From Girardia tigrina (taxonomy: Eukaryota), in the NCBI GenBank assembly GCA_001938485.1, contig MQRK01246051.1, forward strand, positions 1 through 51,750: a stretch of 51,750 nt of DNA, written 5' to 3'. Position 1 is the stretch's first letter. The number at the start of each line of letters is the position of its first letter. Positions 13,206-45,734 of this stretch are shown in pieces. The notes under the pieces were generated by a model. The model was not told the origin of the DNA. It saw nothing but the letters and a program-made list of their open reading frames with translations, and did not search any database. The position numbers were made by a program, and so were the translations under genes.

Positions 13206-13294
13206 GACGGGCATAGCTCGATGGTTACTTCTCTTGAAATTGATAACGAAACAAATCGTATGACATTAAAACCATGAGTGCGATCCGGTCTTTT
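13206..13294 (+). ncRNA. Vault RNA-like Pol III gene, copy A
   Basis: GACGGGCATAGCTCGATGGTTACTTC...AAACCATGAGTGCGATCCGGTCTTTT; A-box TAGCTCGATGG, inner stem GCTC-G-ATGGTT/AACCAT-GAGT, T4 terminator. Confidence 0.7.
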
Positions 13295-13904
13295 GTGTTT
13301 ATTTACTTGTTTCTAATAAAATTATTTTAAGTGAAATTACAAATCGTTGTTAATTAGTATAACTATTTATTTATAATATTCATAAATTTTTAATAATTTC
13401 ATTTTAATTACTAATATGATGAACAAAATTTTCTTTATGCTGATCAAAATATAAATAATTTAAAAACTCAATATAATTTTTAAAAAATAAAAACTTCTTA
13501 TTTATAATTTCAAAATTAATAAATTTTCATAATTCAAATAAATAATAATTTCAAATTTTTAGTTTAGAAATAGTTTTGGCGATTTAAAATTACAATGTTT
13601 AAATTATTTAGAATTAGGTTTTTCATATGGTTTGAAATTAAATTTTTTACATATTTTAAAACTAAATGTTATTTTTGAATAAGTAAAATTAAATTAAAAC
13701 AAGCAAAAGTAATGATTTAAACCAAGAAATTTATAATAAAAAATTTTATTGAATATTACGTTTAATGTTGAATTTTAAAAATTAATGCAGATTAAGTAAT
13801 AAAAAAAAGAAAATTTGTTTGAGTTTTGTTTATGAATAAAAATTATTAATTTTCATTAACCTTGACTACAAAAATTGATGACTTCAAAAAACTACTTTAA
13901 TGAT

Positions 13905-14170
13905 TCTCTTTTTTATAATTTCTAAATAAATATTTATCAATATCTGATATAACATTTTTCTAAAAAAATACTTTTGTATTCTTTTATATTGAATTCTGTG
14001 TGAAAAATAATATTTTAATTTGGTCACATTGACAAATATATACGTAAAGATTAAAGTTGTTCAACGTTATTTGAACCCGAGCTCTACTTTCATTTGATAT
14101 ATTTGTAAATAATTAATTACATAATATACTACTAATGATCTGTAAATAAAATGTTTCTAAAGCAGTTTTA
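13905..14170 (+). repeat. Spacer block associated with the vault-like array (paralog at ~30066-30320)
   Basis: Near-identical ~260 bp block containing atttgaacccgagctctactttcatttg. Confidence 0.8.
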
Positions 14171-14295
14171 TATTTATATTCAATTTTTGATTGGAATCTG
14201 TTTATTGAATTTTTAACAAATACATTTTTAGGGCCCAATTTTAAATTTCATTTCATCTGTATTGATGATTTCATCGCTTAAATTTAAAACGGTAA

Positions 14296-17200
14296 TGTAA
14301 GCGCAGAAACAATAACAACACAGAAATATTTATTAAATGTAACTGCGAGATTTCAGTAAAGTGAAATTGCGTGCATTTATGTCCATTAAAACAAATGCAA
14401 TATCAACCATATTGCTACATTCCCTCTTCAGAGCTTTGATCCAACTCGTACTCCCTCAAAAACACAGGCGGCCTCCTACGCCGTGTCGATCGCCGCGATC
14501 CCGTTCTTTCATCTGACAACGTTAGATTCACGCCGGTTATTGTCCCTTTTTGCCACGCTTCTGAACAGCGAACATTTGGAGGTTTCACGTATACCCGCTC
14601 ACCAACATTATAACCCACTTCGACGTCTCGTACATTTGGTGCAACCTCTCCTTGTCTTAACATCTTCCATCCGTACCGGAACAGATCCTCCTTCGGAGAT
14701 GTCCTCTTTCCAGTTTGAGGGGCAACGTTATACCAATAAACGGCATCACGTGAGTTTATGCCTGCTCTTGCCACCGATGCACCCATTCGACCACGCCGTT
14801 GCCGCTCGGCTTGTTAGCGCTTTGAAAATGCAACTTTACTTTCCACTCTTTACACAGCTCCTGAAAAGCCTCAGATCTGAAAGCTTTCCCACTGTCTCTA
14901 AAACCACCTTTAGTGACCCAAACTCGTAAAATATTTGACTGAAATGCCTTAATAGCTCTTCTGTTGATTCCCCGTTCACCTCTCTCCAGATGGAATAACA
15001 TGAGTAACAGTCTATGATTGTCAAGAAGGGCTTCCGATTGTGATGCGTGAAATCCGTCGCCAAGGTATTCCACACCTTGTCATTTGTTAACTGTCCCTTC
15101 TGGATCCGAACAGGATGCGGGTCTATCGAATTACATTCGTTACAATTCTGAATTATCCTTTTTATATCGTCTTTATTCACGTGGAATCCTTGTCGAATTA
15201 AAATGTTGTGACTTCTCTCAACTCCGAAATGATGTTTTGAATGCTCTCGACGGATATCTGTGTCAGTGAGCTTCGTATCATTCGCCATCATTACAATCTC
15301 TCTATGACTCCGGTCTAACCACGAACTTCTTACCCGTTTTAAAGCGTCAGCTCTGTTCAATTCCGAGGGTATCCAAATCGGTTTCTATTTCACGTTATAA
15401 CTTTCCAAGATCTCCCCGATGGTCGTTAATCGCCTTCTGAATAACATCTCCTTCATTCCGGTTACTTTTATCTTCTTTTCTCTGTGCAGAATCCCACTCA
15501 ACCAGCCAAAGACAGATGCAGAGTCAGTAACGATATCCAATTCCCTCACTCCCCATTTTATCGCCAAATTTATTCCCCTCACGACCGCATCGCGTTCGGT
15601 AACATTGATGTGTGCACATTCAACCTCGCATAGTAACCAACAGCCGTCCTCTACAATGTTTCCTGCAATTTCCAATACGCATCCTATTGCAATTTTACTC
15701 GCATCACACCATACTTTGCCAGATTTCTCACTTCTCGGGACGTACCAGACACCGTTTGCGGGATCATCATTCCTCACTCGTTGAATTGTATCTTCCAACA
15801 TTGTTCGTATATCTTCAGATACTGATTCTTGCCAACGATATCGATTGCATTTTCTTTTTATGAAATTTGCAGCTACCCTCAACCATGCTACGATTGGATA
15901 ATGACTAATTAACTGTCCACAAAACGAAAACACACCCTTTTTCGTTAAACGACTGACAATTTCCGGAACAGTCCTTCCTCTGGTTCACATGACTGTTCCA
16001 TCTTCCTCATAAATTTATAGACCGAACAACTTCGATCCGATGAAATCCGACGTTTCTTTGCACTCCAAACCGAAACACTTCAGATGCTCAACAACTTCTT
16101 CTACCGAAACAACTGATCCGTCTACTAAAATGTCGTTTACTTAAATGCTGGTTTCGGAACGTATTTTTACTACGAAGCTCAACACATGTTTCAGGACTGT
16201 CGTCATAATACATGGAGCCCACGCCAAACCGAAACCTAGCTTTGTCATATTTTATACGACCCCATCGTAACATACCCTCTGATATTTCCAAAGATTCTCT
16301 TTGACATGTAACTGCAGGTACACGTTCCGAAGATCCAATGCCTGTTTATTTTCAGATTTTTGTCGCCATTCTCGGAGTTTAGCGTCGCACGAGTCAAAAT
16401 CCATCATGTGTGATGAAATGGAGGGATTTAACTCGCGAAAATCAAGTACTGGTCTTCCTTTATTTTTCTGCTTCTGAACCACCGCCATCAGTGGTAATAA
16501 CCCTTTCTTTGTTGGATCATCACTTTCCACCAGCCATCCTTTCTCTATCCAAGAATTGATTTCGTCCCTAAATCTCGTCCGTACTTCTGGATCTTTGGTT
16601 GTATAAGAATCAATTTGATTTGTCAGCTTAGGTTCTTTGCGGCTCCATTTCCATTCCACTGTCCACCTTCTATGACTAAATTTTGCGCTAAAGTCTAAAT
16701 CTTCAATGGATATCTCTTTTCTGCCTTCAATCTCGCAATCCTATTTGCAAAAAACGTACTTCTCAGATTCCGGTTTTTTTCCGATTTCATTTGCCTTAGG
16801 AAAATAAATATTTTCCTTATGATCGATACAAAGCCCGCCTAATTTCTCTATTGAATCCATTCCCAATATCACATCGATATTATCAAAAATAAATGAAACG
16901 ATCATACACGAAACCTTGATTTTCGGCATCTCTTCTACTCCTATTATCACATTGCACGTGCCTCTCGTGATTAACGTCGCTCCTCCTATCCCATATAATT
17001 TATGAGACCATCGCTTCTCTACGCCGCAGAGCGTCTCACGAACCATTGTCAGGTTGCTTCCCGTGTCTATTAAACAACGCACCCGTCTCCCGTTCCCACT
17101 CAGTATCGTCTCGGCCGGTGAACCTGGGTTCGACAGAAGTTTCACGGCGCCAGCTATATTCTTTTTTTAAAATCAGTTAACGGAGGCTTACTTTGGGCAC

Positions 17201-17999
17201 TGCCTGACTTCGCGTTATGACTGCTTTCTCCGCAGGAATAACATCTTGCTGGTGACACCCGTTGTACGTGACAATCTCTCGCGAAGTGTCCTCTCTTTCC
17301 GCATCTAAAGCACGTAACACCTTGAAGATATGATCTGGTCGCAAAGGCCACACTTCCATCATTCTTTCTCGCCTCTTGTCAAAGAATCCGAGCTTTCTCG
17401 ACAATGTCATCCAACGACACTTTGTCAAGGTCTCCCATTCTGATCATCGTTTGAATCTTCGTCCCGATATTGCTCGGCAATCTGAGAACAACCAAGAACA
17501 ACACCAGCAGTTTCTCACTCTCACTCACTCCGGACCTTTTACTCAATTTCCGGATGGCCTGAACGTATTCGTCCAACAACTCGTCTCGCCTCAACTTCCT
17601 TTCGCGTAATGACTCAAAACAGTCAATTTTCGACATACCGAAAGCCTCGAACAACGCTTTCTCTATTTCAGCCTGTTCCACCTTCGAGTCATAGCTTAGG
17701 TTGTTCCACACATCATAAACGACGCCCTCCAGAAGCATCGGAATGACTTCTGTTACACATTCTTTCGTAATTTTCGCGACGGTCGTTAATTTTTCAATCC
17801 AGGCCACCACATCGTAATTTTTTCCGTCAAAAATTTTTATCGACTTAAGAATTTTCGATATAAAATCCGATGATAGCTCGTAAGCGTAAAAACAATAACA
17901 CCGAAATATGTATTCAATGTAACTGCGAGATTTCAGTCAAGTCAAATTTCGCGCATTTATGTTCATTAAAAGAAATACAATATCAACCATATTGCTGCA
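14296..17999 (-). mobile_element. Compact Ty3/gypsy-like LTR retrotransposon with ~120 bp LTRs (degenerate gag-PR-RT-RH-IN)
   Basis: LTRs 14296-14419 and 17879-17999, PPT aagagggaa, TSD GGTAA/GGTAT; CFRCGKRGHFARDC knuckle, LIDTGS protease, PVLDFRELN RT, WCDAS..HIN..E RNase H, HHCC/DFT integrase. Confidence 0.92.
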
Positions 18000-18249
18000 G
18001 GTATTTTGAACGTCAAATTGACAAACGACAAATAATTTACGTAAATTTATAAATTTTTTATTCAGTGAATAGATTTTGTTTTTTAAAGATTGTTAAATAT
18101 ATTAATAAAAATCCTAGAACATATATCAATGTAAAAATCATCACTTATATTAGCTTTATCTCATGTGGCTTTGTATAATGTAACACAAAAACAGAAGTTT
18201 CAGAGTTGCTTCAATAAATTAAAACAAGAAAATAAACAACTGTGAAATG

Positions 18250-20129: not shown

Positions 20130-21899
20130 TTAGGTTAGTCGAAAAATAATGGCGGTTTTGGGACACAAACTTCAAAGACGTGCAAATTCACAGAAGCAAA
20201 AGTTTATTAATCAAAGTATGAACCGTTGGCATTAATACATTTTTGCCAACGAGAAACAAGTTGTTTTATTCCATCAGCATAAAATGCATCGGTTATCGAA
20301 GCGACGAATTCTTGGAAGGCATTTTGAGCATCATTTTGGTTTTTAAAATTTTTTCACGTAGGAAGTTGTACAAATACCTGAAAAAGTAGAAGTCTGTTGG
20401 CTAGAGGTCTGGTGAATATGGTGGATGAAGCAGGGTTCTATAGCCCAACTCATTAAGCTTTTGAAGAGTCACTTTTAAATTTGAGGTCTAGTGTTATTAT
20501 GAAGAAGGATGGGACTTTTTCGATTGACCAATCCCGGACAAAGGGTTTTCAATTTCTTATGCATTTCATCAATTTCATGACAGTACCTCTCCGCTGTGAT
20601 TGTTTCACCTGTGTGAGGAATATTTGGTGTGTGGATGTTTTTGTGTAGTTTTTGCATGTTCAAATGTTGTATGTTGATTTGGGATTGTGCCTCTCCTAAC
20701 CAGATCGATTATCAATATTTAATTTTTTATAATCTGAAACTAATTTATTTAAATTTAGATTTAATATTCAAATTTTTAGTTTTTATTATTGCAACTTTTA
20801 AATAATTTTAATGATTTTATTTTTGTAAATTTTTCAATAATTAAAATCAAATTAATGTTTAAAAATGACTATAAAAATATTTTATTTTAGCCAATCAAAT
20901 TTAAATTAAATATTTTTAAATAAAATAATCTTATCAAGTATAGTTCAGATTATAATGGGAGATATTGAAAATTGATTGATGGATTCTAGTGAAAGCAATA
21001 ATATTGATCATCATAAAGATGATAAAAATTGTGAATATAATAAATGTTCTGTCAAATGTGTGAGTTCTCTTAACAACCTGGATTCAAGAAACTATAGTGG
21101 ATGATTCCAGTATCACGACACCAAACTGTCACCATAACCTTATAGGGTGTTAGTTTCGGTTTTGGAAAGTGTTTCGTACTTCATCTTTGTCCAACCACTG
21201 TGCAGATTGACGTCGGTTATCATACAGGATCCATTTCTCATCACAGGTAACAATACGATGAAAAGAAATGGATCGTTTTTATTGCGAAGATGATTGGCAG
21301 AACAAATTTCATAGCGTCTGTTCTTTTGATTTTCATTCAAGTCATGTGGAACCCATTTATCAAGTTTCTTGATTTTTCCAAGTTATTTTAAATGATCCAG
21401 GACTGTTGAATGACTAATGCCCAACCCATCTGCAAGTTCTCTGATTGTTGTATGGGGATCTGTTTCCACCATTGTCCTCAAATTGTCGTTGTTCACAGCA
21501 ACTGGACGACCACGACCTTCTTCATCTTCAAGGTTTTCATCTCCATCAGAAAATTTTCGGAAGCATCGTTGCACTGTGCGCTCAGAAGATGTTCCCTTGC
21601 CAAACGCTTTATTGATATTGCGAGCCGTTTCAGCTGCTTTACGACCCAGTTTAAATTCGTACAAGAAAATTGCTCGAATTTTAATTTTTTCCATTATTAA
21701 TTTAGCACNNNNNNNNNNNNNNNNNNNNNNNNNNNNNNNNNNNNNNNNNNNNNNNNNNAATAATGGCTATAGGAATATACAGCTAGGCATAAGATTTCAA
21801 ATAATATCAAACACTAATGCATTTAAACTTATATACATATCAAAGTAGATAAACAAAGTATAAAGCTCAAAAACCGCAATTATTTTTCGACCAACCTAA
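20130..21899 (-). mobile_element. mariner (cecropia-like) element, full span, disrupted by a solo LTR
   Basis: TIRs ttaggtt(a/g)gtcgaaaaataat at both ends, TA TSD; KWVPHDL, LLHNNTRP, HPPYSPDL motifs; ORF 21383-21694. Confidence 0.93.
20612..21075 (+). mobile_element. Solo LTR of the gypsy family at 30797-34060
   Basis: TG...CA ends, 5 bp TSD ACCTG (20607-20611/21076-21080); removal restores mariner NPGETIT; similar to 30797-31251, ~24025-24185 and ~49582-49860. Confidence 0.88.
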
Positions 21900-22009
21900 T
21901 ATATTTTAAAATAATTATTTTTGTAACAATCTGTTTGATAATAAATAATAAGATTGTTCGAATTTTATTAATTTTATAATTATTGAGATATACAACAATA
22001 GTACAGAAA

Positions 22010-24213: not shown

Positions 24214-26220
24214 CACACCAGGTTCTTAAGAAATAGCAAATGTATGTTTTTAGAGAGTAACTCTTTTTTACGTACTAATAAGTAGTAGTTAACCGTTACA
24301 ATAATAAATAAATAGTGATAATTATAAATATTATAATTAATTATATGTATGTAAACCTTCTGTTTATGTTAAAGATACATAATTAATTCAATTGCATCTT
24401 TAGAGGATGTGTTTTACTATGTCATTTAAATTATTTCAGTGTTTGTATACCAATCAACTAAACGTTTAGTTTATTTTAGTCATATACGTGTATAAGTAAA
24501 CAAATACATTGCAATTTAAGTATCATAATAGTATTTTGCTTTTTTATCGCCTTGTTATAGATTTGATTAGATATGACATCGCGTGGTTGTATTACTTCTA
24601 AGAATAAAATTTTTTATGTTTGTTGACTTTCACAGACAAGAGTCACCAGAAGATTATAACTCCACTATTAAAGAAAACATATAAGCTCTACTTTGATTCA
24701 AAAGTAAATATTGGCAATTTGTGGGCTCCATCAATTTTTTATTCAACGTGTGCTAATACACTGTCAGGGTGGTTACGCATGTCCAAAACAAGCAGGCCCG
24801 TGCCATTTGGTGTGCCGATGATATGGAGAGAGACCATGGATCATGTGACCGACTGCTATTTATATATGACCAATGTTCGTGGATTTAACTTCAAGACACG
24901 AAAGTCGATTGCATACCAAAATGTCAACTCTGTGTCAAAACCTCTACCACATGATCCCATAAGCTGCCTTGCACCAGTTCCTCCAATGGAGTACTCATTC
25001 GAAGATACACTGGATAATATGTTATCTGATGAAGATTGCGATTCTGATTCATATTATAAACCAAATGATGATGTGCATTTAATAAACTATGCAGAACTTT
25101 GTGATCTTTTTCGTGATTTAGCACTTACAAAAGGTCCGGCAGAAGTTCTAGGTTCACGACTTATAGAGTTTAACTTGCTTGCTCCTGGTACTTTGATAAC
25201 AAATTTCCGATACCGACAGAAAGTTTTTTTTCAGTACTTTAATACGAGTGACGCTATCTCTTACTGCAAGGATGTTAATTGCCTCATAAAGTCTCTTGGG
25301 AATGAATACCAGTCAGATGAATGAAGACTACTTATCGATGCGTCCAGGAAAAGTCTCAAGGCAGTTCTTTTGCACAATGGCAACAGACTTTCTTCTATAC
25401 CAGTCGCCTATTCTCTGCACATGAAAGAAACATATGATAACATGGTGCTACTCCTTGATAAAATCCGGTATCGTGACCACAATTGGCGTGTCTGTGGAGA
25501 CTTAAAAGTTGTTGACATTCGTCAACTGTTATGCAAACAGGTAGGTAAATCATATAATACATAATGAATATAGATGTACAGTTATACACACATTACCCAA
25601 ATACTCTTGTCTTAGGTTATACGAAATACTGTTCTTTATTTGCGAGTGGGATTGCAGAGACAGAAAGCAACACTATATCAAGAAGTCTTGGCCAATTCGT
25701 GATCGCATGCAACCTGGAAACAAAAACGTTATTCATAATCCACTTATGGATCGAGAGAAAGTGATTATGTCACCACTGCACATTAAGTTAGGCCTCATTA
25801 AGAACTTTGTAAAGGTATTGGATATAAACAGTAGAGGCTTCCTTTACCTACGCCAAAAATTTCCTCAAGTAAGCATGTTTGTTTGTTTGATAAACCATAT
25901 TCCAAACATCATATTTTATTGAATTTTTTAGATTAGTTTGCACAAAGGTAATGGAAGGTATTTTCGTTGGCCCTCAGATCAGATGCATTATAACTGATCG
26001 ACAGTTTAAGGAACTTTTAGTCGAAAAAGAAAGAAATGCTTGGATTTTGTTAAAGTCAATTGTTGCAAACTTCTTGGGAAATAATAAAAGTGGTAACTAC
26101 CAAACAATCGTATAAACGAGTATTGATTCATACCAACCGATGAGTTGCAAGATGTCGTTTAAGATTCATCTCCTTGATTCGCATCTTGATTTTTTTCCCG
26201 ACAATCTTGGTGCAGTCATT
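24214..26220 (+). mobile_element. Chapaev3-like (CMC) transposase pseudogene with two short introns (25545-25615, 25869-25931)
   Basis: PFGVPMIWRE..DH.TDCY, LIDASRKSLKAVLLHNGN, CGDLKVV, LHIKLGL, EGIFVGPQIR, HLDFFPDNLGAV; GT-AG removal gives QVG|YTKYC and KFPQ|IS. Confidence 0.8.
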
Positions 26221-28047: not shown

Positions 28048-28350
28048 TTATTAAATAAATTTTCATTTTTGAAACATAAACGTAGCATTTTATAAAAAAT
28101 TAGCAAAAATATATACCTGATAAACAAAAATTTGAAGAAAATTTCACGTTTTGAAATTTATATCAAAATTGGTATTTTAATTTGTAAATTTAATTTATAA
28201 ATCATAAAAATCTGTTATTATTTAAATTTTAAAATAATGAAATATTAATTCACTTTTTTGAAAATTTGATTTGTATTAATAATCTACTGAAAAGTATAAG
28301 TAAACTATTTTATTTATTATCATTTAAATAAAATAGATGACATCATTATT

Positions 28351-28431
28351 GACAGGCATAGTCTGATGGTTACTTCAGGAACTAATTATATTTCAAATAC
28401 AATGTTAACCACGGATGGGATCCTGTCTTTT
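28351..28431 (+). ncRNA. Vault RNA-like Pol III gene, copy B
   Basis: GACAGGCATAGTCTGATGGTTACTTC...TAACCACGGATGGGATCCTGTCTTTT; perfect GACAGG/CCTGTC stem, inner GTCTG-A-TGGTTA/TAACCA-CGGAT. Confidence 0.7.
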
Positions 28432-29987: not shown

Positions 29988-30320
29988 AATTTATTTAAAT
30001 TACTGATTTATTAAAGAAAAATATACTAATCAAAATATTTAAAGTATTGATCAATTAAATACAAGCCTCTTTTTTTAATTTCTAAATAAATATTTATCAA
30101 ATCCGATATAAAATTTTTCTAAAAATACTTTTGCATTTTTTATATTTAAACCTGTATGAAAAATAATATTTTAATTTAGTTAGATTGACAAATATATAAG
30201 AAAAAATTAAATTTGTTCAACGTTATCTGAGCCCGAGCTCTACTTTCATTTGGTATATTTTTAAATAATTAATTACATAATATACTACTAATAATCTGTA
30301 AAAAATGTTTCTCAATCAGT

Positions 30321-30517
30321 TATTAACTTTTTTCGAGAGTTAGTCCTTGCGGCCCCCACCTACATTAATTAGGTCACACACCCTCGCAGGGCCGCCGCTA
30401 CCCCTAATTGACCTTTAATTTATCTTAAAATTGAATATTTATTACATCTTAATTAATTACATTCAATGATACTATCTGATGTCATCCGTTACTCTAAAAC
30501 ATTGAATTCAAGCTGTC
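30321..30517. repeat. Unidentified structured two-copy element, copy 1 (paralog 45203-45388)
   Basis: Shared blocks cgag(a/t)gttagtccttgcgg...cacacaccctc..agggccg...cctaattgaccttt and tatctgatgtcatccgttactctaaaacattga.ttcaagctgt. Confidence 0.75.
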
Positions 30518-30796: not shown

Positions 30797-33700
30797 TATT
30801 AAGAACATTTAAACAAGTCTCGTTTGAATGTTTATTAGAATCACATTTAGAGTCATTATGACTCTCAGAAAGTCTTTCATCGTTTGTCATCCTTCTAATT
30901 GGTTTTCTTATTTCTATTTTTAATCATGATTATTCGAACAATTTTTCTAAATTATTTTTAAAATAATTAGCCTCTAAAAATATTAATTAAAAAAATAGTA
31001 ATTTTTACCATTTTTCAATAAATCTTAAAATAATAAAAATGTCATTATTAAAAATGCATTTAATTTAAATTTTACTAAAAAATATTAAACTTAATTTTAA
31101 TTGTGTTCGAATAGTCAATCACTTTAAATTTAAATAAAAAATACCAATGTCCATCTGGGTGGGAGAATCACCATTCTAAATTCAAAATACTTAAATCAAC
31201 ATACAGCATCCATACATTTACACATTCAAACAAATTAAAATATTCCTCACATCCCCCATCGGTTTAAATGGCTTTAGCCATTCTTCAATGTTAGGATTAT
31301 AGTTTTAACTTTTGCTTTTTTAGCGTCATCGAGCATTGTCTGACATTGTACATATAGTTCACATGTATTTCTCGACATTGCGTCTGCATTAGTGTGTTTT
31401 TTGCCCTTGCGGTATTCCATCCTCATGTCTAGTCCAACAAAGAAGTTTATCCAAGTTTGGAATTGTAGAGTTATTGAGTTCTTCGTTGTCATCATGAATG
31501 TGATGGACTTATGGTCCGTTCTAAGTAAAACCTTCTAGGATATGCGAGGATCGGTGTTTTTGTCATTTTATCTTTTAATGTCTGAAATACTTCGTTACAT
31601 TCCTTTGTCCATGTCAGTTTTTTATCTTTATTTTTTCCACATAGTCCTTCCAGTATTTTTGAATATTTTGCATAATCATTCAAAAATTTTCTATAATAGT
31701 TCGTTAGCCCCAAGAAACTTCTTAAATGTTTAATGCATGAAAGATTTTGAAATTTTTCGATTGCTTCAATTTTCGTTTTATCCGTCTCTATACCATCTTT
31801 GCTCACGACATATCCTAAAAATTTTGTCATTTCTACCATGAATTGATACTTTTCAGGGTTTATCCCAAGGACCGATTCTTTAATCTTTTGAAATATTTGT
31901 TCGACTCGACTGAAATATTCTTCTTTGTCTTTTGCGAAGATTAGAATATCGTCCAGGTATACAACTGCTTCTTTCCAGTTTAATTCTCCTAACACTCTTG
32001 TCATTAGTTCTTGAAATGTCGCTTGGGCAGCTGCAATTCCGAATGGCATTCTTATAAAACAATATTGGCCGTTCTTTGTCGAAAATGCAGTTTTTAATTT
32101 TGAATCGTTCTCCAATTCAACTTAATGATATGCACTCCCCAAGTCAATCGTGCTGAAGTATTTCGCTCCATTTAATGTATTTAGCATTTCTTATACATTT
32201 GGCATTGGAAATGCTTGTCTGATTGTGACTTTATTTAATTGTCGAAAATCAACACATACTCTGATAGCCTGTTTGTCTTTTTTCCATATGCATACTAGCG
32301 GAAAATTCCACGGCGAACTGCATTTTTCAATGATATCATTTTCCTCGTAATTCTTGATAATGTCATCTAGTATTTCCTCAAAGTGTTTTGGCTGTCGGTT
32401 TGGTTTTACCAATATTGGTTCTCCTTGCGTTTCAATTTTATGCTTAGTTAGTGTGGTCTTCCCTATATCCCATTTGTCCGCAATAAATATCGTTTTATAT
32501 TCTATTAGTAATTTCATTAATGGTTCATCTATCTTATCTGTGTATATTTCACTTATTCTTCTAAGTCTGTCTCCGTCAGTTAAAGTATCACGTATTACTA
32601 GCACTCCTTCGTTGTATCATGTTTCTTTCTTTAGTTTTATGTTGAATTTATTTAGGAAATCTATTCCTGCAATCATTTCGGGTTCCAAATCTTCTACCAC
32701 AAAAAAATCCACTGTTTTCTGTATTCTTTCAATCTTAATCTTTAGTTGTACTATTCCATAATTTACTAGTTCCGAATCGTTAGCACAGTGTATATGTCTT
32801 TTTGACTCCTTTATTTTGAAATTTTTCATATTTTTGAGTACGTCTACTTTAATTACATTGACTCGTGCTCCCGTATCCAGTAGACATCGTACTTTTTATT
32901 CTTTATTTGAAATCCTATACTAGGTCTCCCTTTCAGTTCTTCATATTCTATTTTAAACATTGATATTTTCATTATCTCTGTGCTTCTTTAGAGTTATTGA
33001 GTTCTTCGTTGTTTTATATTTTCTACATTTATATTTTCATAATCTTTTTCTGTGATCAAACTCTCACATTTCTCATTGTGTATTTCTTTTTCACCATCTA
33101 ATATACACAATTCTTGAGGAATATTTTCAACAGCATCCCATAAACAACATACGTCATCATACAAACAATCATTCATACAGTCAAACATACACATACATTC
33201 GTTTCTTAGTGAAGTGCACTTATCACTTCTCCCTGTGACCGTGCCTCCTCTTTTCCCTGTTCGTCTCGGAAATTTTTCCTGTTTGTAATATTTTCTCTTC
33301 TTGTTAGACTTCCTCTTTTATTCGATCTTTCCGACATTCTTTCCCACTCGTCGTCGAAGTCTTCTAATTCTGCTACTTGGTCTCTTCTATTCGTATATCC
33401 CATTCTACCTCTGTATTATGTGTTTGTGTATTCTTTTCGTTCATTTTTTCTATTCCTTGTATCTTCTCTTCTAGATTGTTCGCGCTCTCTAAATCTGTTT
33501 GGATTTTCATAAAATTGTGTTCTTACATGCCCTTTCTTATTACAATGGCTGAATTTAACATTTGGGCATTCCCGTCTCATGTTCTTCTTCATGGCAGGCC
33601 CGATATATGATTCTTCTCACATTAAAATTTCTTCTTGGTTCTTCGATCTTTCTCTCTTCGTATCTTGGTCTCGGTCTTCTTGTTCTATATTCTACTTTCT

Positions 33701-34060: not shown

Positions 34061-34065
34061 TTTCC

Positions 34066-34258: not shown

Positions 34259-34259
34259 T

Positions 34260-36700: not shown

Positions 36701-36705
36701 TGTGG

Positions 36706-36791: not shown

Positions 36792-36819
36792 AGCCGTTCT
36801 TCAAAATATTAATGAAGGC

Positions 36820-36899
36820 AAAAGACAGGATCGCGTCTGTGGTTTAATCACAAGATTAATGGTTTCGCTAGAAGAAGTAACCACCGGACTATGCCTGCC
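36820..36899 (-). ncRNA. Vault RNA-like Pol III gene, copy C
   Basis: rc GGCAGGCATAGTCCGGTGGTTACTTC...AAACCACAGACGCGATCCTGTCTTTT. Confidence 0.7.
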
Positions 36900-36904
36900 A
36901 CTGC

Positions 36905-37335
36905 CATTGTGTAATATTTTGTTTATTAATAAATTCAAGCAGTAGAATATCAATGCTAATAAAATTTTGAAAACAATTGCTATTATTAATTTATTATTTC
37001 AAATAATATTAAAATTTAATGATTCATTAAATAAATTTACAAATCAAAATTTATTTTCGAAAGAAATTAAAGCGTCATCGTTCATAACGAAAATCAGATT
37101 GATGTTATTCAATTTTATTTTATTTACAAAATAGTACTTATATTAGCTATTTACAAATTATAAGTAGTATATTATGTAGTATATATTTTTTACAAATACA
37201 TCAAATCAAAGTAGAGCTTGGGTTCAAATACATTTGAATAACATTTATTTTTGTGTATAAATTTGACGAAAATTATTTATTATTTTTATATAAGTTTTGA
37301 TAAAGATGGAGGAAATATTTTTATGTTTCTTATAA
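36905..37335 (-). promoter_or_regulatory. Conserved upstream region of vault-like genes (paralog ~45740-46170) with an opposite-strand B-box-like motif
   Basis: Near-identical 5' flanks of copies C and D; caaagtagagct(t/c)gGGTTCAAAT about 303 bp upstream in both. Confidence 0.45.
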
Positions 37336-37535
37336 ACAAAGTATTGGGTTCGCGATTAAAATTCAAAGTGATAATTTGCAAACTTTATTTCTAATACAAC
37401 TTTTATTACTCAAACAAATTTATGAGGAACAATATTTCAGTTACATAAACCAGATTTTGAAACTCAAAATATAAATAATAATATTGATGTATATATATGT
37501 TATTTTATTCAAATCATATTTTGTTTTTTTTGCTT

Positions 37536-38542
37536 TTATTTTGCTGGAGATATCCCTGTGGTTGCCTGAATTGTGCTATTTAGCATAAACTCTATTTCTG
37601 GCAGGGTTTCCGACCAATCTTTGTGGACCTCGTCTTTCATCCGTATATTCATGTCATCCCTAATTGTTCTGAATTGTCTCTCAACAACCCCATTGGTATT
37701 GTGGTGGTAAGGACTGGAATATACTATCTCAGCTTTAAATTTATTTGCTGTTTCTTTAAAAAGGGCTGATTCGAATGTTTTTCCTCTATCGACATGGATT
37801 TCTTTTGGTGGTCCGTGTTTCCAAATCCATTTGTCTAGTAAGACCTTTCGCACGGTTCTCTCGTCTTGATGAACTACTGCGTTCAAACTGATGTATCTGC
37901 TAAATTGATCGATTATCGCTAGTATGTATTGACATCNNNNNNNNNNNNNNNNNNNNNNNNNNNNNNNNNNNNNNNNNNNNNNNNNNNNNNNNNNNNNNNN
38001 NNNNNNNNNNNNNNNNNNNNNNNNNNNNNNNNNNNNNNNNNNNNNNNNNNNNNNNNNNNNNNNNNNCAACTTTGCACAATTTCTTTTACCGTTTTTCTCA
38101 TATCTTCCATATCGAAATCATCCTTCAAATAATTATAAACTTTCTTGCTACCAGCGTGACACAGCATCTTGTGTATTTCTTCCACCAATTCAGTCCTTTT
38201 ACCTTTCGGAATCCAGTATTTGTTATCCATTGTCGTTACGATATCATCTTTCAGTAACCATTTCTTTGTTTTCCCAGTTTTGATATCTGATCTAATTTGT
38301 TTTANNNNNNNNNNNNNNNNNNNNNNNNNNNNNNNNNNNNNNNNNNNNNNNNNNCATCGTCTAACGCTAGGATTCTTGTTTTAACTTTACCCTTCTTAGC
38401 TTCCTCATGCATAGTTTGACATTGTACACACATTTCACAGGAATTTCTCGACATTGCATCGGTGTTAGAGTGTATTTCACCTTTCCGGTATTCCATTGTC
38501 ATATCCAACCCACTTAGAAAATTTATCCAAGTTTGAAATTTA
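37536..38542 (-). pseudogene. Gypsy pol fragment (RNase H end plus integrase), gapped
   Basis: DAMSR, IHKMLCHAG, YILAIIDQFSRY, IHVDRGKTF, SSPYHHNTNGVVERQFRT. Confidence 0.9.
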
Positions 38543-39663
38543 CAAACAATTTTTACAATGTTTATTAATTTGGAATATAAATTTAGATCTTTAAAATTAT
38601 TTTAATGGACATGTTCTGTAAAAATTCAATTCCTAAATTATTTTTCTTTACTTTTAAAAATTCAATTATAAATAATTTTTAATGCGAATTTCCGTTGACA
38701 ATTAAATTCAATAAACATTATGATTTTTATTTTAGAACTAGATTTTAAAATATTCAATAAATTATATTTTTTTAATAAAACTTTCCATTGACAATTAAAT
38801 TTAATAAAATTTTATGATTTTTTATTTAAAGTGTTACAAGATATATCAAAATTTCTTTACAAATATTCTTTTACTCTGAAAGTGTTATTTTAATTGTGAT
38901 TTTTAAACCTAATTTTTTATCAAAGTTCTTTCGATTTAATTAATAAAATATTATCATTACACTATACTTTTTATAAAATTTATTTTATTTTAATTAGTAA
39001 AAATATTATATTTTATTATTATTATTAAATTTTTATATATAATTTCTTTCAATAGTTCTTTCAATTTAATTAGTAAAATAATATTTTTTAATTTATCTCA
39101 AACATAATTATGATTTTTAATTTAAAAATAACAAAAATTTTCAGTTTACCAAAAAGAACTCCTAACAAAAAGAATAATAATCATTTTCAAAATTATATAA
39201 TTTGACATTGAGATATTTTCGGTAGTTTCGAGAAGGTTGAAGACGAATAAGTAGTTTCGGTAAAATGGAGCTCTAAATGGAGCACCTTTGGAGAATACTG
39301 TATTGCAAGTATAATGCAAGAATAATGTATTGAAATACTGAAACGGAGAAGATAGCGGTATTTGCATGGGCTGCGTGAATGACATAGAGTTTTAGGGTTT
39401 TATGATTAAACGACTAATTATTGAGACATTTAATTGTTTTATTTAAATGTGGTTGCAGTTTGCAAAACATGGACCTATTAAATAATACCTTTTAAATTAA
39501 TCGTACAAAGTTTTTTTCGAAATTCACTTCCTCAGACAAGACATTTGTAAGTAGGACACATTTTAACGTTGCATTTTTATGATTTTGGCGAGTTTTCTGG
39601 CACTATTTAAATTTAGGGACTGGCAGTCCTCATCTCTTAAATGGTAGCTGATCAATTGCACAG

Positions 39664-40610
39664 GGGTCCATGCCGATAGTATTATGAGATTTGAGGAGAC
39701 GTGTGGATTCTCCAATGATAGAACTACAAATGACAGCGATCAGTTTTGTCTTTCTTCCTAAGAAAAAGATAATTCAGAATTTGAAGATATACCCTTGAAC
39801 CTTGCTATAATAGTATCAAAAAGGGTGAGAATAAAGTGCGTTTAAAGGCGATTTGCGATTTTTGAATTCTCAAATTTAGGAAATGATAATGATGTCTCTT
39901 TTTCCCGTGTTAACCGGTCGTCTTTCAGTGTGAGTTTGGAATATGTAGCATCGGTATCGATAAATTCTCATTATCAATTTTTATTAAGTGACTTTAATTT
40001 TAAGCTGACTAGCGTTATGACTTTTTAAAATCTGTTTTCCTGGACGTAAAATAATGAACTTTAGCATATCTAGAACGAATATATCTTTTATTTCGATTTT
40101 AATCAAAATTTATCAAAATCTTTGTATTTGTACATAATTTTATTATAATCACGATAGCATGTGTTTATGTCTGTACATTCGTGTTAATAAATTTCAGATG
40201 AATATACTTGCCACTTTTGTACGTCATATAAATATTTTCCTTGGCCTTCACAGTCCTTTAAGTTTCAATGTTTGATCAAGGAACATCAATAATCAAGTTT
40301 TGATCACCCGTTGCATTTTAAAGCTTTTTTTCGCCTTTTAACAACTCGATTCGGTTAGTGCTGATAGGAGATTATGATACACATGAGCGTTGAAATGTTG
40401 GTTGGAAAACACGTCGAGACGAACACAGTAGATATACAGCTGCAGAGATTATTTAACTGATCACGATACTGACACAAAACGGAATATGTAAGAACAGCAA
40501 ATTTTTCTCAGGAGTTCCATCTTGCATTGCTGAGACAGGGACGCTTTCACCATTTAATGATGAGTAACATGCCACAAGCCTTATGTAATTTAAAGGCTTC
40601 ACAAATTTCA
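39664..40610 (-). mobile_element. Degenerate DNA-transposon remnant, paralog at 47812-48716; superfamily uncertain
   Basis: Two co-linear ~0.9 kb copies; copy 2 reads VIDVPQSNIVVERAVKTMKNIY. Confidence 0.5.
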
Positions 40611-40615
40611 AACAG

Positions 40616-40662
<47 letters not shown>

Positions 40663-40764
40663 AGGACATGGATTATTGTGTATGTTTCGGAATATCTTTT
40701 ATTCATCACCAGCAATCACATTTGCTAGTTATTTTTTTAATGTTACTGATCGTAAAATTTAAAT

Positions 40765-41220
40765 TTGATTATCGACTCGGAGAAAATTATAACAGTTTCT
40801 GAGAATTCCCAGTGGCGCCGGACAGATGATGACATGGTCGGAGTAGCGTTAATGTCACTTTCATTATCAATAAATTTAAAGCTCATAACTCAACACCAAA
40901 ATTTTATTAATATCACAACTAGAGATTTTCAAACAAATTTTCGTTTCGCCCGAAAGAAAATGTAGCGTGGTCGATGCACTCTACTCTTTTCGTTGAGTAA
41001 CCAATCTGGAATACATCTCAAAAGTTCCTACTTCTTGTGAGATTGAAACCACAATATTCCATTTCATTAGACAATTAAAATTCTTGGTCCTAATGAGGAT
41101 CGGTTTTCATTCAAATATAATTAGTTGACCGTAAAATGCGTCTTAGACCATGTCATCATCTGTCCGGCGCTACTCGGAATTCTCAGAAATTTTTATAATT
41201 TCCTCCGAGTCGATAATCAA
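40765..41220. mobile_element. MITE/foldback with ~75 bp inverted repeats
   Basis: ttgattatcgactcggag...ccggacagatgatgacatggtc (40765-40839) mirrored at 41146-41220. Confidence 0.65.
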
Positions 41221-41460
41221 TGGAATTATTCTTTTTTGAAAATTGATGATCAAAGGCTTCATTGAAAGTGTCGTCAACGGACTCGCGATAAACGTATCGT
41301 CTGAGATTCTGTTTATTTGACGAATAATATGATCTCATTGTAATAATTTATTTTCATCAAAAGGATCATTATCCGAATAAAATATTTTTCTTAATTTCTT
41401 AACTTCAATCAATTTTTTCGATAAATTTATATGCAAAGACTCGTACTTAAAATGTTTATA

Positions 41461-43678
41461 GAGTTATTCATAATTATATACCCATCTATTGAAAATTATA
41501 TACACAATATTAAAAATTTTTATTAACCTTCCAGCGGGCGCGCTGAATAACATCACTGGAGCGGGCGCTTGTCGTAAATTTTACGTCATCAAGTTTTCTT
41601 CATGTAAATGGTGTTTTCTTTATATAAATGTAAGGGAATTGCTNNNNNNNNNNNNNNNNNNNNNNNNNNNNNNNNNNNNNNNNNNNNNNNNNNNNNNNNN
41701 NNNNNNNNNNNNNNNNNNNNNNNNNNNNNNNNNNNNNNNNNNNNNNNNNNNNNNNNNNNNNNNNNNNNNNNNNNNNNNNNNNNNNNNNNNNNNNNNNNNN
41801 NNNNNNNNNNNNNNNNNNNNNNNNNNNNNNNNNNNNNTGTAAAGGATTGACAACGGCAACACTTCCTTGATGCTGAGGATCTTTTTTTCTCCAGTGCACA
41901 TGACCGACAGACACCGCGTTTTGGAGGGATTCTTTCTTCTTCTGTTGTCGGTTCAACTTCCCAACGTAATTCACTTTGAGAAAAGCAGTTATATCTTGCG
42001 GTAAATGTTTGACATTTGACCTGAAGATAAGATGCTCTTTCATCATGGTCAATGCCAAATTTTTTAGAAAAATTCTTCTATACTTTGGATCTTTTTCTGG
42101 GCATGCAAATTTGTATAAAATTTGATGGAACGTGTCTAAAATATATAAAAAAATACGTTTAGCAATAAAATGAACTATATAAACGAGAAATAAATAGAAA
42201 AAAGTTGTTTATTGAATGTACTTACATGTTTTATGATATGGTAGGCGCGTGTTGTAAAATTTACGCTCAACGGAAATTCCCAAATATCAATGAATAACAA
42301 ACTTCTAAGCACACTCGATACGTCTGTAGTTTAGAGAGACACTGACCTTCGAATAGGTTGGAGCTCGCCGCTTATAACTAAGTGGTATAAGAAGGGGAAG
42401 CTATAATGCGCATTTGTCGTAAATTTTACGACTGCGCGCCCGTTAGAAGGTTAATATATTTTTAGACTTTACACCTTATTAAATGCCTAGAAAAGAAAAC
42501 TATTACAAAAGATATTTACGATCTAATTATTTCCATGAGTCAAAACCAAAGCCACTCAAAAAAATATATTTGCGAAATTTTGAATCTCGATCGTAAAACG
42601 GTTAGGAAACAAATACAAAATCACGAAAATGGGAAAGAATTCGTGTCATCATCAACCATGATGAGGGAAACATGCCGAATAAAACAGAATACTTTTAATA
42701 ATATCGATCAATTGATATTTAATTCAGTTTCTTGTAATAATAGTCTGATTCAGAATGAATTAGCTAAAATCATTGAGAATCATGAAAATATAACAATATC
42801 GCAACAAACAATATCGAGAAAGTTATCCAAAATGCAAATAAGTAGAAAATGGCTCACTTTAGTGCCAAAACAAAGAAATACAGAAGATAAAACAGACATG
42901 CGATCAATTTATGCATGCGAACTCGGTAGAATCTCGGATTCTAATCTTGTTTTTCTCGACAAAACGGGATTTAATTAACACACGACAAGATCCTTTGGAT
43001 ATTCACTCGTAAATACAAAGGCACATTTAAATGTAGATACCAACAAAGGAAAAAATATTAACTTGATGTGCGCCATTGACGATTCAGGCTTATTGTTTTA
43101 TCAATATAAACAAGGTTCGTTTACATCAGAAACCTTTATTGAGTTTTTGAATAATGGTTTTGGCAGTTATCTAAAGGCAAATCCAGTTAAAATACTTATA
43201 ATGGACAATGCTGCCATTCATAAATCCGCACTCTTAGCTCAATATTTTCAAAACAGAAATATTCGAGTAAAATATACAGTTCCATACTCCCCGGAATTAA
43301 ATCCAATCGAAGAATTTTTTTCGATGATAAAATCTAGATATCACTCGGCCAGAAATACTAACAGTGAAATATGTATTGGGGCTACATTAGACTCGATTTT
43401 ATGTTCGAGACAGGATTATTCGCAGGAATGTCGAAACTTTTTTATAAATATGAGAAGATGGCTAGAAAGAGCTAGAAGAAGAGAAGATTTTATTTAATTA
43501 AATTCTTGGTAAAATTAATAATTATTATCCGTTTGTCGTTTTAAGATATCTTTGTTCAATCTTAATTAAAAAATAATTTAATAATATTTATTTTGTCTAT
43601 AATATTAATAAATGGGTATATAATTTTGAATAGATGGGTATATAATTTTGAATAGATGGGTATAATTATGAATAACCC
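41461..43678 (+). mobile_element. IS630/Tc1-like DD34E transposon, nearly intact transposase (~42482-43497), containing a nested piggyBac
   Basis: TIRs g(a/g)gttattcataattat..acccatctatt with TA flanks; LDKTGFN*, IMDNAAIH, YSPELNPIEEFFS. Confidence 0.9.
41527..42450 (-). mobile_element. Non-autonomous piggyBac derivative
   Basis: TTAA TSD (41523-41526/42451-42454), TIRs CCTTC(CAG/TAA)CGGGCGCGC; residual C-terminal coding RRIFLKNLALTM and GVCRSC..KCCRC. Confidence 0.85.
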
Positions 43679-44309
43679 TATATTTTTTAATTTAGTTCAA
43701 ACATTACAATTCATTATATTATGTTACCGCAAATTCATATATTAAAACAATTTCTTAAACAGCAATTTAATCATTTTACATTTAATAAATTACCAAAAAA
43801 ACTCGAAGAAATTCACATATTAAAATTCAGACTTTATGAAGATAAAAAAATAGAATACCGAAATAACAATCCAAACATAAAATTAAATCAATTTAAAAAT
43901 TATTTCTAAATAAAGACTTTATATTTCTATATTCTATTTCTATATTTCTATATAGAAATATATAAGACTTTATATTTCTATATAAAGACTCAATATTTTT
44001 AAAAAACAAACAATTATTCGGTCAGTTTCGTGGAATGGTTCAAATGACAATTTAGTCCCATCTCACCAGAAATTAGAAACCAAAAAATTAATTTTGATTC
44101 CCAAACAGTTATTTTTTATTAAGTTATTTTTAAAGGGGAAATTTATTTATTTATTCATCTTAATTCAAGATATTATTGGATAATAATAAGAAAATGCTTA
44201 ACAAATTTTCATTAGAGATTTTTCGATTTGAAACGGGTTTACTTTCAATGTTTATTAATGAGTTGTATTGTCTAATTAATAATGATTAAAAAAACTACCA
44301 CTCATAGTG

Positions 44310-44700
44310 TGAATCAAAGCCCTTCTGTAAAACAGAAAACATACTTTGAAACAGAAGAGAACGCTTTTGTTTCTGCTTTTCATTTAACTCATGTGTAATC
44401 TACATATCCAACTTTTTCACTTTACTAATTCGAGCAAAGCAATTTAATAGTACTTTCTTTGTAAGAGCAAACGTTAACTGTTATATCATGTCAACTTTGT
44501 GACAGATCCGACTCCACGGTTACCTTTAGTTCATCATTGTCTACCTGCGTTATTATGTAACTGCTATCGATTAACAAATTCATAATTTTTATCATTTTAA
44601 TCGCTTCAGAGTTGATACTTTTAATATACAACTGGAAATTGTTATCTAATCGAACTAGTTTGGATGATACAATAACACGCCTGTTAAGATGAGAATTTTA
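44310..44700 (-). pseudogene. mariner N-terminal remnant
   Basis: rc VDNDELKVTVESD, KVKKLDM*ITHELNEKQK. Confidence 0.6.
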
Positions 44701-45202
44701 ATATGTATTTTTGTGTGTTTCAACCAAGGGCGTAGCCAGGATTTCGTTTCGGGGGGATTATGATGAACACACCACACTTTCAGCCAGACTCACTCCAGTC
44801 CACACACAAATACAATCACTCGTTCTCACACATACACATAATCATACCTTTAAGGATTTTATTGTTTTGTAAAATACCTTTTCAATATTGTTTATGGTTT
44901 AGTAAGAATGAAGAGAGCCTGGATACGGACGTTACAATGTATTTTACAGTCATTTTAAGGAATAAATAATTTAATATTCATAATATTGATTGCATTCGGA
45001 AATAGATAAAATAGCTAAGTTAATATTTAAAGCTCAAGTCATCGTTGGGAATGATTAAATTCTTCCAGTACTTCATCAGCACTGACTGAAACTTCCCAGT
45101 GGATTGGCAGCATATCCATTTTGTCCTCAATGTTTGTCTGAGGTTTCGGTATTTTTTTGAGGTATCTAAAGTTTTTATGCTATATAAAACCTTTATGTCA
45201 AA

Positions 45203-45388
45203 TATTACTTTTTTCGAGTGTTAGTCCTTGCGGTGTCCTCCCACATTGACAAAGCCACACACCCTCATAGGGCCGAATCTGTTCCTAATTGACCTTTTTA
45301 TTAATGTTTTCATAAATTTACAAATTAATTACATTGAATGATATTATCTGATGTCATCCGTTACTCTAAAACATTGACTTCAAGCTGT
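45203..45388. repeat. Unidentified structured two-copy element, copy 2
   Basis: Paralog of 30321-30517; lies ~250 bp 3' of vault-like copy D. Confidence 0.75.
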
Positions 45389-45642
45389 AATAAATATTCA
45401 GTTTTAAGATAAATTAGTAATAATGTGGAAATGTTACAAAATAGTGGTAATATAGAAACATCAACCTGAATCAATTAATTAAGAAATTGAAATTCTCTGA
45501 TAATAAAGACGCAAAACAAGAGAGAAATTATTAAAAAATATTAAATACACTTTAAAGGCGAAAGAAGTGAACAAAGAGTACAAACTTTTTATTTGAATAT
45601 TTATTTATATATTAAATTTACCAAAAAAATATTAATGAAGGC

Positions 45643-45734
45643 AAAAGACAGGGTCGCGTCTGTGGTTTACTCAATGGAGACATTGTTTCACTAGAAATGA
45701 TTTCGTTAGAAGTAACCGCCAGACTATGCCTGTC
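45643..45734 (-). ncRNA. Vault RNA-like Pol III gene, copy D
   Basis: rc GACAGGCATAGTCTGGCGGTTACTTC...AAACCACAGACGCGACCCTGTCTTTT; A-box TAGTCTGGCGG. Confidence 0.7.

What the first reader, a model, noticed from the sequence alone, without database searches (positions are those of the whole stretch)
13206..45734. Four diverged vault RNA-like Pol III genes hidden among transposon debris
Seen: four 80-92 nt copies (13206-13294+, 28351-28431+, 36820-36899-, 45643-45734-) share G(A/G)C(A/G)GGCATAG....GGTTACTTC at the 5' end and AACCA..G(C/G)GA(T/C)CC(T/G)GTC-TTTT at the 3' end, around a variable AU-rich loop. The inner helix covaries (GCUC/GAGU in A, GUCUG/CGGAU in B, GUCU/AGAC in D). Established: vault RNAs have a terminal panhandle, an A-box (human vtRNA1-1 UAGCUCAGCGGUUACUUC), a variable central loop, a B-box and an oligo-U end. 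Inference: this is a vault RNA gene family in an invertebrate, probably non-deuterostome, where vtRNAs are poorly described. The internal B-box is eroded (ATTAAAACC/GTTAACC/GATTAAACC/GAGTAAACC).
Basis: partly seen in the sequence, partly recalled or inferred. Interest (0 to 1): 0.9.

Follow-up and report, generated by a model that had tools for sequence, protein, structure and literature searches.

The report
Cluster of four vault RNA genes
Four short RNA polymerase III-type genes lying between transposon remains in an AT-rich animal genome are real and match the known vault RNA family, so they are new members of a known RNA class, not a new kind of gene.

Summary
Rfam's Vault model (RF00006) is the only one of 4227 families that matches. 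Three copies pass its gathering score (34.8-35.6 against 34) and the fourth scores 22 bits. Each copy folds on its own into the same panhandle. Four base pairs of the inner helix change on both sides and stay paired. The ends are 75-92% identical, while the central loops are only 33-69% identical and differ in length. All four have a TATA-like hexamer 25-28 nt upstream, homologous upstream DNA, no internal T4 run and a T4 end. This fits genes copied as DNA, not SINEs. No assembly gap touches a gene or its conserved flank. The source animal could not be identified, so MVP/TEP1 presence and the 'non-deuterostome' claim are untested. Rfam already holds vtRNAs from Lottia, Helobdella and Macrostomum, and clustered vtRNAs were reported in Fasciola in 2022. 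That makes this a new member of a known kind. One oddity remains: copies C and D share nearly identical flanks but have strongly diverged loops.

The parts
13206..13294 (+). vtRNA-type gene A (89 nt including the T4 end)
   Evidence: Rfam Vault 34.8 bits against a gathering score of 34. E = 1.4e-6 when only this locus is searched, next family E about 6. Folds alone to the panhandle. R1 model 100.8 bits.
28351..28431 (+). vtRNA-type gene B (81 nt); shortest loop, weakest B-box-like stretch, possibly a variant or pseudogene
   Evidence: Rfam Vault 22 bits, below the gathering score. E = 0.0057 in the locus-only search, and still the only credible family. Folds to the same panhandle with z = -2.2.
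36820..36899 (-). vtRNA-type gene C (80 nt)
   Evidence: Rfam Vault 35.6 bits. Fold z = -2.3.
45643..45734 (-). vtRNA-type gene D (92 nt)
   Evidence: Rfam Vault 34.9 bits. Fold z = -2.9.
13178..13183 (+). TATA-like hexamer TAAATA at -28 of gene A
   Evidence: The motif TAAAYA occurs at 0.0024 per position in the window, so about 0.009 per gene for a start within -28 to -25.
28325..28330 (+). TATA-like hexamer TAAATA at -26 of gene B
36920..36925 (-). TATA-like hexamer TAAACA at -26 of gene C
45754..45759 (-). TATA-like hexamer TAAACA at -25 of gene D
28174..28289 (+). Upstream region of B (-177 to -62), homologous to the upstream regions of C and D
   Evidence: blastn 77% identity over 118 nt, E = 3.7e-11. 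The shared blocks are also visible in A.
36803..37337 (-). Duplicated unit holding gene C: 17 nt downstream, the gene and about 435 nt upstream
   Evidence: The flank is 97% identical to the D unit, and the loop differs at 32% of sites.
45626..46172 (-). Duplicated unit holding gene D

Best explanation
These are four paralogous RNA polymerase III genes for vault-type small RNAs (vtRNAs), forming a local cluster that grew by DNA-level duplication. Shown from sequence: each unit has a box-A-like stretch at +9 to +24 that aligns to the box-A part of the Rfam Vault consensus and ends in GGTTACTTC. Each has a weak B-box-like stretch just before the 3' strand of the helix, a TATA-like hexamer at -25 to -28, homologous upstream DNA, no internal T4 run and a T4 end. 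Each RNA folds into a panhandle: a 6-bp terminal stem, a small conserved internal loop, an inner helix of about 10 bp with one bulge, and a 29-41 nt AU-rich loop that varies freely. Inferred: transcription is driven by a mixed promoter (internal box A, weak box B and an upstream TATA-like element) and stops at T4. The conserved panhandle would be the protein-binding part, as in known vtRNAs, where it serves the vault particle through TEP1 and La binds the oligo-U end. The loop would be free to diverge. Expression and vault association are not shown.
For: Rfam RF00006 is the only matching family. A, C and D score 34.8-35.6 bits against a gathering score of 34. In locus-only searches the E-values are 1.4e-6 (A) and 0.0057 (B), and the next families have E of 5 or more. 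There is no tRNA. All four fold alone to the same structure, with z from -1.4 to -2.9. RNAalifold gives the same consensus. 93.8% of cells pair, against 25-50% for slid partners, and 4 pairs change on both sides. The ends are 38-47 of 51 sites identical, while the loops are 33-69% identical and carry indels. A TATA-like box sits at a fixed distance in three independent lineages. Upstream homology between B and C/D is 77%, with blocks also visible in A. No copy has an internal T4, whereas only 38% of random 82-nt stretches of this window lack one. There are exactly four copies. C and D lie in an old duplication of roughly 8.8 kb period that different TE insertions have broken. In the literature, the panhandle with a variable centre defines vtRNAs (PMC9179338). 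TTACTTC after box A is the most conserved vtRNA block in Lottia, Helobdella and Fasciola, box B is poorly conserved there too, and 4 of 5 Fasciola vtRNAs are clustered (PMC8824774).
Against: The Vault scores are only 1-2 bits above the gathering score. At whole-genome scale a single 35-bit hit would be expected by chance, since E is about 5e-4 per 52 kb. The assignment therefore rests on the family having been found independently of the model. Copy B is below threshold. Copy A has a G-G mismatch in the terminal stem. With four sequences, two of them recent duplicates, the covariation statistics are thin: 9 to 27 of 500 shuffles reach the observed values. No relatives from other genomes could be fetched. 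The organism is unknown, so MVP and TEP1 could be absent. There are no expression data.
Confidence: 0.78

Rival explanations
1. A lineage-specific Pol III small RNA that descends from, or converged on, the vault RNA design but does not serve a vault particle, for example in an animal that has lost MVP.
For: The Vault scores are marginal. The B-box-like stretch is weak and the RNAs are at the short end of the vtRNA range. The taxon is unresolved: named relatives of one TE protein are spread over sponge, insects, an arachnid and fishes. Arthropods, fungi and plants lack MVP (PMC3762200). Most human vtRNA is reported to be outside vaults (PMC9179338).
Against: The vault-specific GGTTACTTC block and the 3' internal-loop and stem block both align to the Vault model over its whole length, positions 1-99. 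No other Rfam family matches.
Confidence: 0.12
2. Copies of a short mobile element with a tRNA-like Pol III head (SINE or MITE) scattered among the other transposons.
For: The region is mostly transposon remains. There are four copies in 32.5 kb. Copy A is bracketed by a 15-nt direct repeat with one mismatch, 6 nt upstream and 20 nt downstream, a match length reached by 2 of 383 random controls. A separate 120-266 nt repeat lies near every copy.
Against: There are no partial or decayed copies in 52 kb. Homology extends upstream of the transcription start, which RNA-mediated copies would not carry. There is no A-rich or simple-repeat tail, only a T4 end. B, C and D lack target-site duplications beyond chance. 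Divergence is concentrated in the loop with compensatory changes in the stems, which is a pattern of selection rather than neutral decay. ARAGORN finds no tRNA-like gene. C and D were copied as part of a multi-kb DNA segment.
Confidence: 0.05
3. A decaying, unexpressed relic cluster of pseudogenes of a vtRNA family whose working copies lie elsewhere.
For: The setting is TE-rich and lacks host genes. Copy B is below the Rfam threshold. Copy A has a mismatch in the terminal stem.
Against: Stems, promoter-proximal blocks, TATA-like boxes and terminators are kept in all four copies while the loops diverge, and paired positions change in a compensatory way.
Confidence: 0.04
4. Chance similarity in AT-rich DNA.
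For: None beyond the low complexity of the surroundings.
Against: 0 of 100 shuffles give any match to the 5' block, against 4 observed. The four copies score 84-101 bits and the next best place 12.9.
Confidence: 0.01

Closest known systems
Rfam RF00006 Vault RNA (vtRNA)
   Same: Full-length alignment to the model (positions 1-99), with terminal and inner helices, a box-A block ending in GGUUACUUC, a 3' internal-loop and stem block and an oligo-U end. Three of four copies are above the gathering score.
   Different: The scores are marginal. Where the model consensus has UUU ahead of the AG that opens box A, these RNAs have AU (one base fewer). The B-box region is degenerate, the inner third helix of the model is not kept, and the length (80-92 nt) is at the low end.
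Fasciola hepatica vtRNAs, and the Lottia, Helobdella and Macrostomum entries in Rfam (PMC8824774)
   Same: By eye they share the start of the 5' strand, the GGTTACTTC block, a 3' strand ending in ATCC plus the stem plus a T run, poor box-B conservation, and clustering (4 of 5 genes within 133 kb in Fasciola).
   Different: The Fasciola RNAs are about 107-112 nt and GC-richer.
Human VTRNA1-1/1-2/1-3 cluster
   Same: A small local cluster of Pol III paralogues with a conserved handle and a variable central domain (PMC9179338).
   Different: There is no protocadherin or other host gene in the window to test synteny. The upstream elements are not comparable beyond a TATA-like box.
Y RNAs and other panhandle Pol III RNAs
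   Same: Small Pol III transcripts in which the 5' and 3' ends pair and the RNA ends in oligo-U.
   Different: No Y RNA or other family matches, even at E up to 10 in locus-only searches.
tRNA-derived SINEs
   Same: An internal box-A-like promoter and multiple copies among transposons.
   Different: No tail, no convincing target-site duplications, no fragments, upstream homology between copies, and a terminator at the end of the conserved unit.

Membership tests
Vault RNA (RF00006) | Score at or above the curated Rfam gathering threshold (34 bits), with no better family | tested here: met
   A 34.8, C 35.6 and D 34.9 bits. B scores 22 bits and does not meet it. Vault is the only family with E below 1 at each locus tested.
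Vault RNA (RF00006) | Panhandle: 5' and 3' ends pair in an extended stem that is kept across paralogues | tested here: met
   The single-sequence folds agree. 93.8% of cells pair and 4 pairs have both-side changes. The RNAalifold consensus is the same.
Vault RNA (RF00006) | Box A followed by the conserved TTACTTC block | tested here: met
   GGTTACTTC is invariant in all four copies. It is described as the most conserved vtRNA block in PMC8824774 and aligns to the model consensus.
Vault RNA (RF00006) | Internal box B | tested here: inconclusive
   Only a degenerate stretch aligns to the model's box-B positions, and B lacks 5 nt there. Box B is also poorly conserved in published fluke vtRNAs (PMC8824774).
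Vault RNA (RF00006) | Central domain variable in sequence and length | tested here: met
   Loops are 29-41 nt and 33-69% identical, against 75-92% for the ends.
Vault RNA (RF00006) | Pol III terminator (T run) at the 3' end, none inside, length 80-150 nt | tested here: met
   All four end in T4, have no internal T4 and are 80-92 nt long.
Vault RNA (RF00006) | Expressed as a stable small RNA | not testable with these tools
   No transcript data for the unknown source organism.
Vault RNA (RF00006) | Associated with the vault particle; MVP and TEP1 encoded in the same genome | not testable with these tools
   Only 52 kb is available, there is no host gene in the window and the organism was not identified.
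SINE or other retroposed Pol III element | Many dispersed and decayed copies, a 3' tail, target-site duplications and no homology upstream of the start | tested here: not met
   Four intact copies and no fragments. No tail. A duplication-like repeat only at A, and not abutting the unit. Upstream homology is present. The genome-wide copy number is not testable.
tRNA gene | Cloverleaf recognised by a tRNA finder | tested here: not met
   ARAGORN finds 0 genes in the window.

The most novel reading that the evidence does not exclude
In copies C and D the promoter-proximal flank and the stems are kept nearly identical (about 97%). Their central loops are as diverged as, or more diverged than, the old parts of the same duplication (32% mismatches plus a 12-nt indel). 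This could mean that the loops are under diversifying selection while the rest is homogenised by gene conversion. The loop would then carry a sequence-specific function, such as a guide or decoy, rather than being a neutral spacer. A second possibility is that the host lacks MVP and these RNAs work without vaults.
Probability: 0.12. Interest if true: 0.6.

Novelty: new member of a known kind. Interest (0 to 1): 0.35.

Why it matters
Vault RNAs are hard to find outside vertebrates because only the ends are conserved. A clean four-gene cluster with intact promoters adds members that could sharpen models of the family for invertebrates. The paralogues also give a small natural experiment. Their stems co-vary, their upstream blocks are kept and their loops run free, which marks the parts of the RNA and promoter that are under constraint. 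If the source animal belongs to a group with no described vtRNAs, or one without MVP, the value rises. As it stands, a routine Rfam annotation would already label three of the four as Vault.

Tried and rejected
1. Relatives elsewhere. Exact-pattern scans with the 5' block plus the AACC anchor gave one hit in metagenome contigs and one in bacterial/archaeal genome contigs. One is a coding-like stretch (13.6 bits with R1) and the other is in a bacterial MAG (no R1 hit). Both are chance matches.

2. Identifying the organism.
- Two TE proteins hit mainly unnamed metagenome fragments at 79-91% identity. The word-index search excludes full-length TE proteins by length.
- An exhaustive search with the 234-aa ORF found named relatives only at 36-45% identity, in a sponge, a moth, a sawfly, a pseudoscorpion and bichirs. 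No taxon follows beyond 'metazoan'.
- Contigs carrying relatives gave no usable context.

3. Other readings of the RNAs.
- Other Rfam families: none.
- Complementarity of the loops to the rest of the window, as for a guide against the local TEs: the longest exact matches of 10-14 nt are no longer than for shuffled loops.
- A conserved far-upstream octamer (AATTTTAA at -115 to -126) is probably a composition effect.

4. The sub-threshold MIR847 and mir-297 matches lie on simple AT repeats and are spurious.
Full report
**Observation**

- The 5' block (GGCATAG, then a short variable stretch, then GGTTACTTC) occurs four times even with three mismatches allowed. It occurs zero times in 100 shuffles.
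- The 3' block, from AACCA to the T4 run, is shared by all four.
- A covariance model of the four (R1), run over the whole window with filters off, returns them at 84-101 bits. The next best place scores 12.9 bits.
- There are therefore exactly four copies in the window, with no degraded fragments.

**Assembly gaps**

The window has gaps at 4853-4910, 5199-6091, 21709-21758, 37937-38066, 38305-38354, 41644-41837 and 51412-51553.
- None lies within 600 nt of a gene or of the flank shared by C and D, so no feature described here crosses a gap.
- For the gap at 21709-21758, both sides match adjacent parts of one transposon copy at 5007-5198, in the same order and orientation (pairs I11 and I13). 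The two sides therefore look collinear.
- For the other three gaps inside the finding I could not establish continuity. They sit in transposon remains.
- The gaps make the A-B and C-D spacings uncertain and could hide further copies. I did not fill them or look up their letters.

**What the units are**

Rfam's Vault model (RF00006) matches A, C and D at 34.8, 35.6 and 34.9 bits, against a gathering score of 34. The alignment covers the whole model. B scores 22 bits.
- Searching each locus alone against all 4227 families gives Vault at E = 1.4e-6 for A and E = 0.0057 for B. The next families have E of 5 or more.
- ARAGORN finds no tRNA.
- At whole-genome scale a lone 35-bit hit would not be significant, since E is about 5e-4 per 52 kb. 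The weight comes from the family having been found by mutual similarity first and then matching only this model.

**Structure**

Each RNA folds on its own into the same panhandle. It has a 6-bp terminal stem, a small internal loop whose letters are almost invariant, an inner helix of about ten pairs with one bulge, and a 29-41 nt AU-rich loop.
- RNAalifold predicts the same consensus.
- On the alignment, 93.8% of cells form standard pairs, against 25-50% when partners are slid by 1-3 columns.
- Four pairs of the inner helix change on both sides and stay paired.
- With only four sequences the shuffle statistics are modest: 9 to 27 of 500 shuffles reach the observed values.
- Copy A has one G-G mismatch in the terminal stem.
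- The ends are 75-92% identical between copies. The loops are 33-69% identical and differ in length.

**Gene anatomy**

- The box-A part of the Vault consensus aligns to +9 to +24 of each copy and ends in GGTTACTTC. A published search for fluke vtRNAs used box A plus the flanking TTACTTCG of Lottia and Helobdella as the most conserved vtRNA block. The same study found box B barely conserved (PMC8824774). Here too, only a degenerate box-B-like stretch precedes the 3' strand of the helix.
- Every copy has a TATA-like hexamer starting 25-28 nt upstream. The motif's frequency in this window gives about 0.009 per gene for that placement, and A, B and C/D are three independent cases. The motif was chosen after looking, so this is supportive only.
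- No copy has an internal T4 run, and all end in T4. Only 38% of random 82-nt stretches of this window lack T4.
- Upstream DNA is homologous between copies. B (-177 to -62) matches C and D at 77% identity, and the same blocks can be seen in A.
- Homology upstream of the start, a terminator at the end of the unit and the lack of a tail argue for DNA-level gene duplication and against retroposition.
- Only A has a flanking direct repeat longer than chance: 15 nt with one mismatch, which does not abut the unit.

**The C/D pair**

C and D lie in an old duplication whose copies are now about 8.8 kb apart.
- The distal parts (39168-40479 against 46180-46244 plus 47812-48668) are 75-92% identical. 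Different transposon insertions interrupt the two copies.
- The 0.55 kb around each gene is far more alike. The upstream flank has 12 mismatches in 435 sites, the stems 4 in 52 and the 17 nt downstream none.
- The loop, in contrast, differs at 9 of 28 aligned sites and carries a 12-nt indel (Fisher p = 5e-7 for flank against loop).
- Gene conversion that spares or predates the loop, or fast divergence of the loop, could each produce this pattern. I could not decide between them.

**Mechanism**

Shown: the sequence features above. Inferred:
- Pol III transcription comes from a mixed promoter (internal box A, weak box B and an upstream TATA-like element).
- Transcription starts at the conserved G and terminates in the T4 run.
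- The product is a panhandle RNA whose conserved handle is the protein-binding part. The loop is free to vary, as described for vtRNAs (PMC9179338).
- Binding to a vault particle is assumed by homology only.

**Surroundings and organism**

- The window is 31.5% G+C and consists largely of transposon remains: BEL/Pao-like and Gypsy-like retroelement pieces, pogo-like, Tc1-like and mariner-like DNA transposons, and a GIY-YIG domain ORF. No host protein gene was recognised.
- TE proteins have close relatives (79-91% identity) only in unnamed metagenome fragments. Named relatives at 36-45% identity come from a sponge, insects, an arachnid and fishes.
- The source is a metazoan, and nothing finer can be said.
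- MVP is reported from sponges, cnidarians, bivalves, annelids, some nematodes and echinoderms, but not from arthropods (PMC3762200).

**Novelty**

According to PMC8824774, Rfam already carries vtRNAs of Lottia, Helobdella and Macrostomum. The same paper reported five vtRNAs in Fasciola, four of them clustered. Three of the present genes pass Rfam's own threshold, so routine annotation would label them as Vault. This is a new member of a known kind. Interest is moderate to low, raised slightly by the clean paralogue set and the C/D loop pattern.

**Limits**

- No relatives from other genomes could be fetched.
- The comparison with the published Fasciola sequences was by eye, because they have no reference id and were not typed into tools.
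- In my private working I recalled a few short strings from memory: the start of a human vtRNA, the Pol III box consensus and a piece of typical 28S rRNA. None was entered in a tool or used as evidence.

Noticed in passing
window 10284-10932 (-): A 649-nt fragment of eukaryotic large-subunit rRNA (Rfam LSU_rRNA_eukarya, 417 bits, model positions 675-1446 of 3401). It stands alone next to a pogo-like transposase remnant and is probably a displaced or decayed rDNA piece.
   Followed up: no
window 13906-14170 (+), 30067-30325 (+), about 37148-37265 (-), about 45982-46094 (-): A 120-266 nt repeat lies near every vtRNA-type gene and in the gene's orientation. It is downstream of A (+700) and B (+1716) but upstream of C and D (about -360 to -250). 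The A and B copies are 89% identical, and they are 80-83% identical to the C and D copies. It contains a short GC-rich core. No Rfam match.
   Followed up: partly
window 14308-17999 (-): A BEL/Pao-like LTR retroelement bounded by 112-nt direct repeats that are 88% identical (D13). Its integrase, RNase H-like and DUF7047 domains were checked with Pfam; the gag, protease and reverse transcriptase parts are inferred from their translations only. Its coding region is split over at least six ORFs, so there are at least five interruptions. Whether they are stops or frameshifts was not resolved.
   Followed up: partly
window 31287-32761 (-) and 37385-38540 (-): Gypsy-like reverse transcriptase/RNase H and integrase fragments. 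The second abuts two assembly gaps. Both are incomplete pieces. The closest relatives, at 79-91% identity, are seen only in unnamed metagenome contigs.
   Followed up: partly
window 46478-47647 and 42535-43497: Two Tc1-like DNA transposon remains. The first has 87-nt inverted terminal repeats that are 83% complementary (I17) and sits inside the D copy of the C/D duplication. The second carries HTH and DDE_3 parts in two ORFs.
   Followed up: no
window 4922-5198 and 21630-21925: Two inverted copies of a mariner-like element, 87-99% complementary, each running into an assembly gap (I8, I11, I13). Long (AT)n tracts flank the first copy, and these explain the spurious mir-297 match.
   Followed up: no
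window 13186-13200 and 13314-13328: A 15-nt direct repeat with one mismatch brackets gene A, 6 nt upstream and 20 nt downstream. A match this long was reached by 2 of 383 random controls. It could be chance in AT-rich DNA or the trace of an insertion or duplication event.
   Followed up: partly
window 24620-25324 (+): A 234-aa ORF with no Pfam domain belongs to a large family with no function assigned: 2418 cluster representatives at E up to 0.001. Members are found in sponge, insects, an arachnid and bichirs, which suggests a transposon-borne protein.
   Followed up: partly
loops of A, C and D (window 13232-13269, 36836-36873, 45661-45708): The 'variable' loops of A, C and D share a short motif, (C/T)GAAA(C/T), present twice in A and D. 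D's extra 12 nt looks like a local duplication of it. B lacks the motif in this orientation.
   Followed up: no
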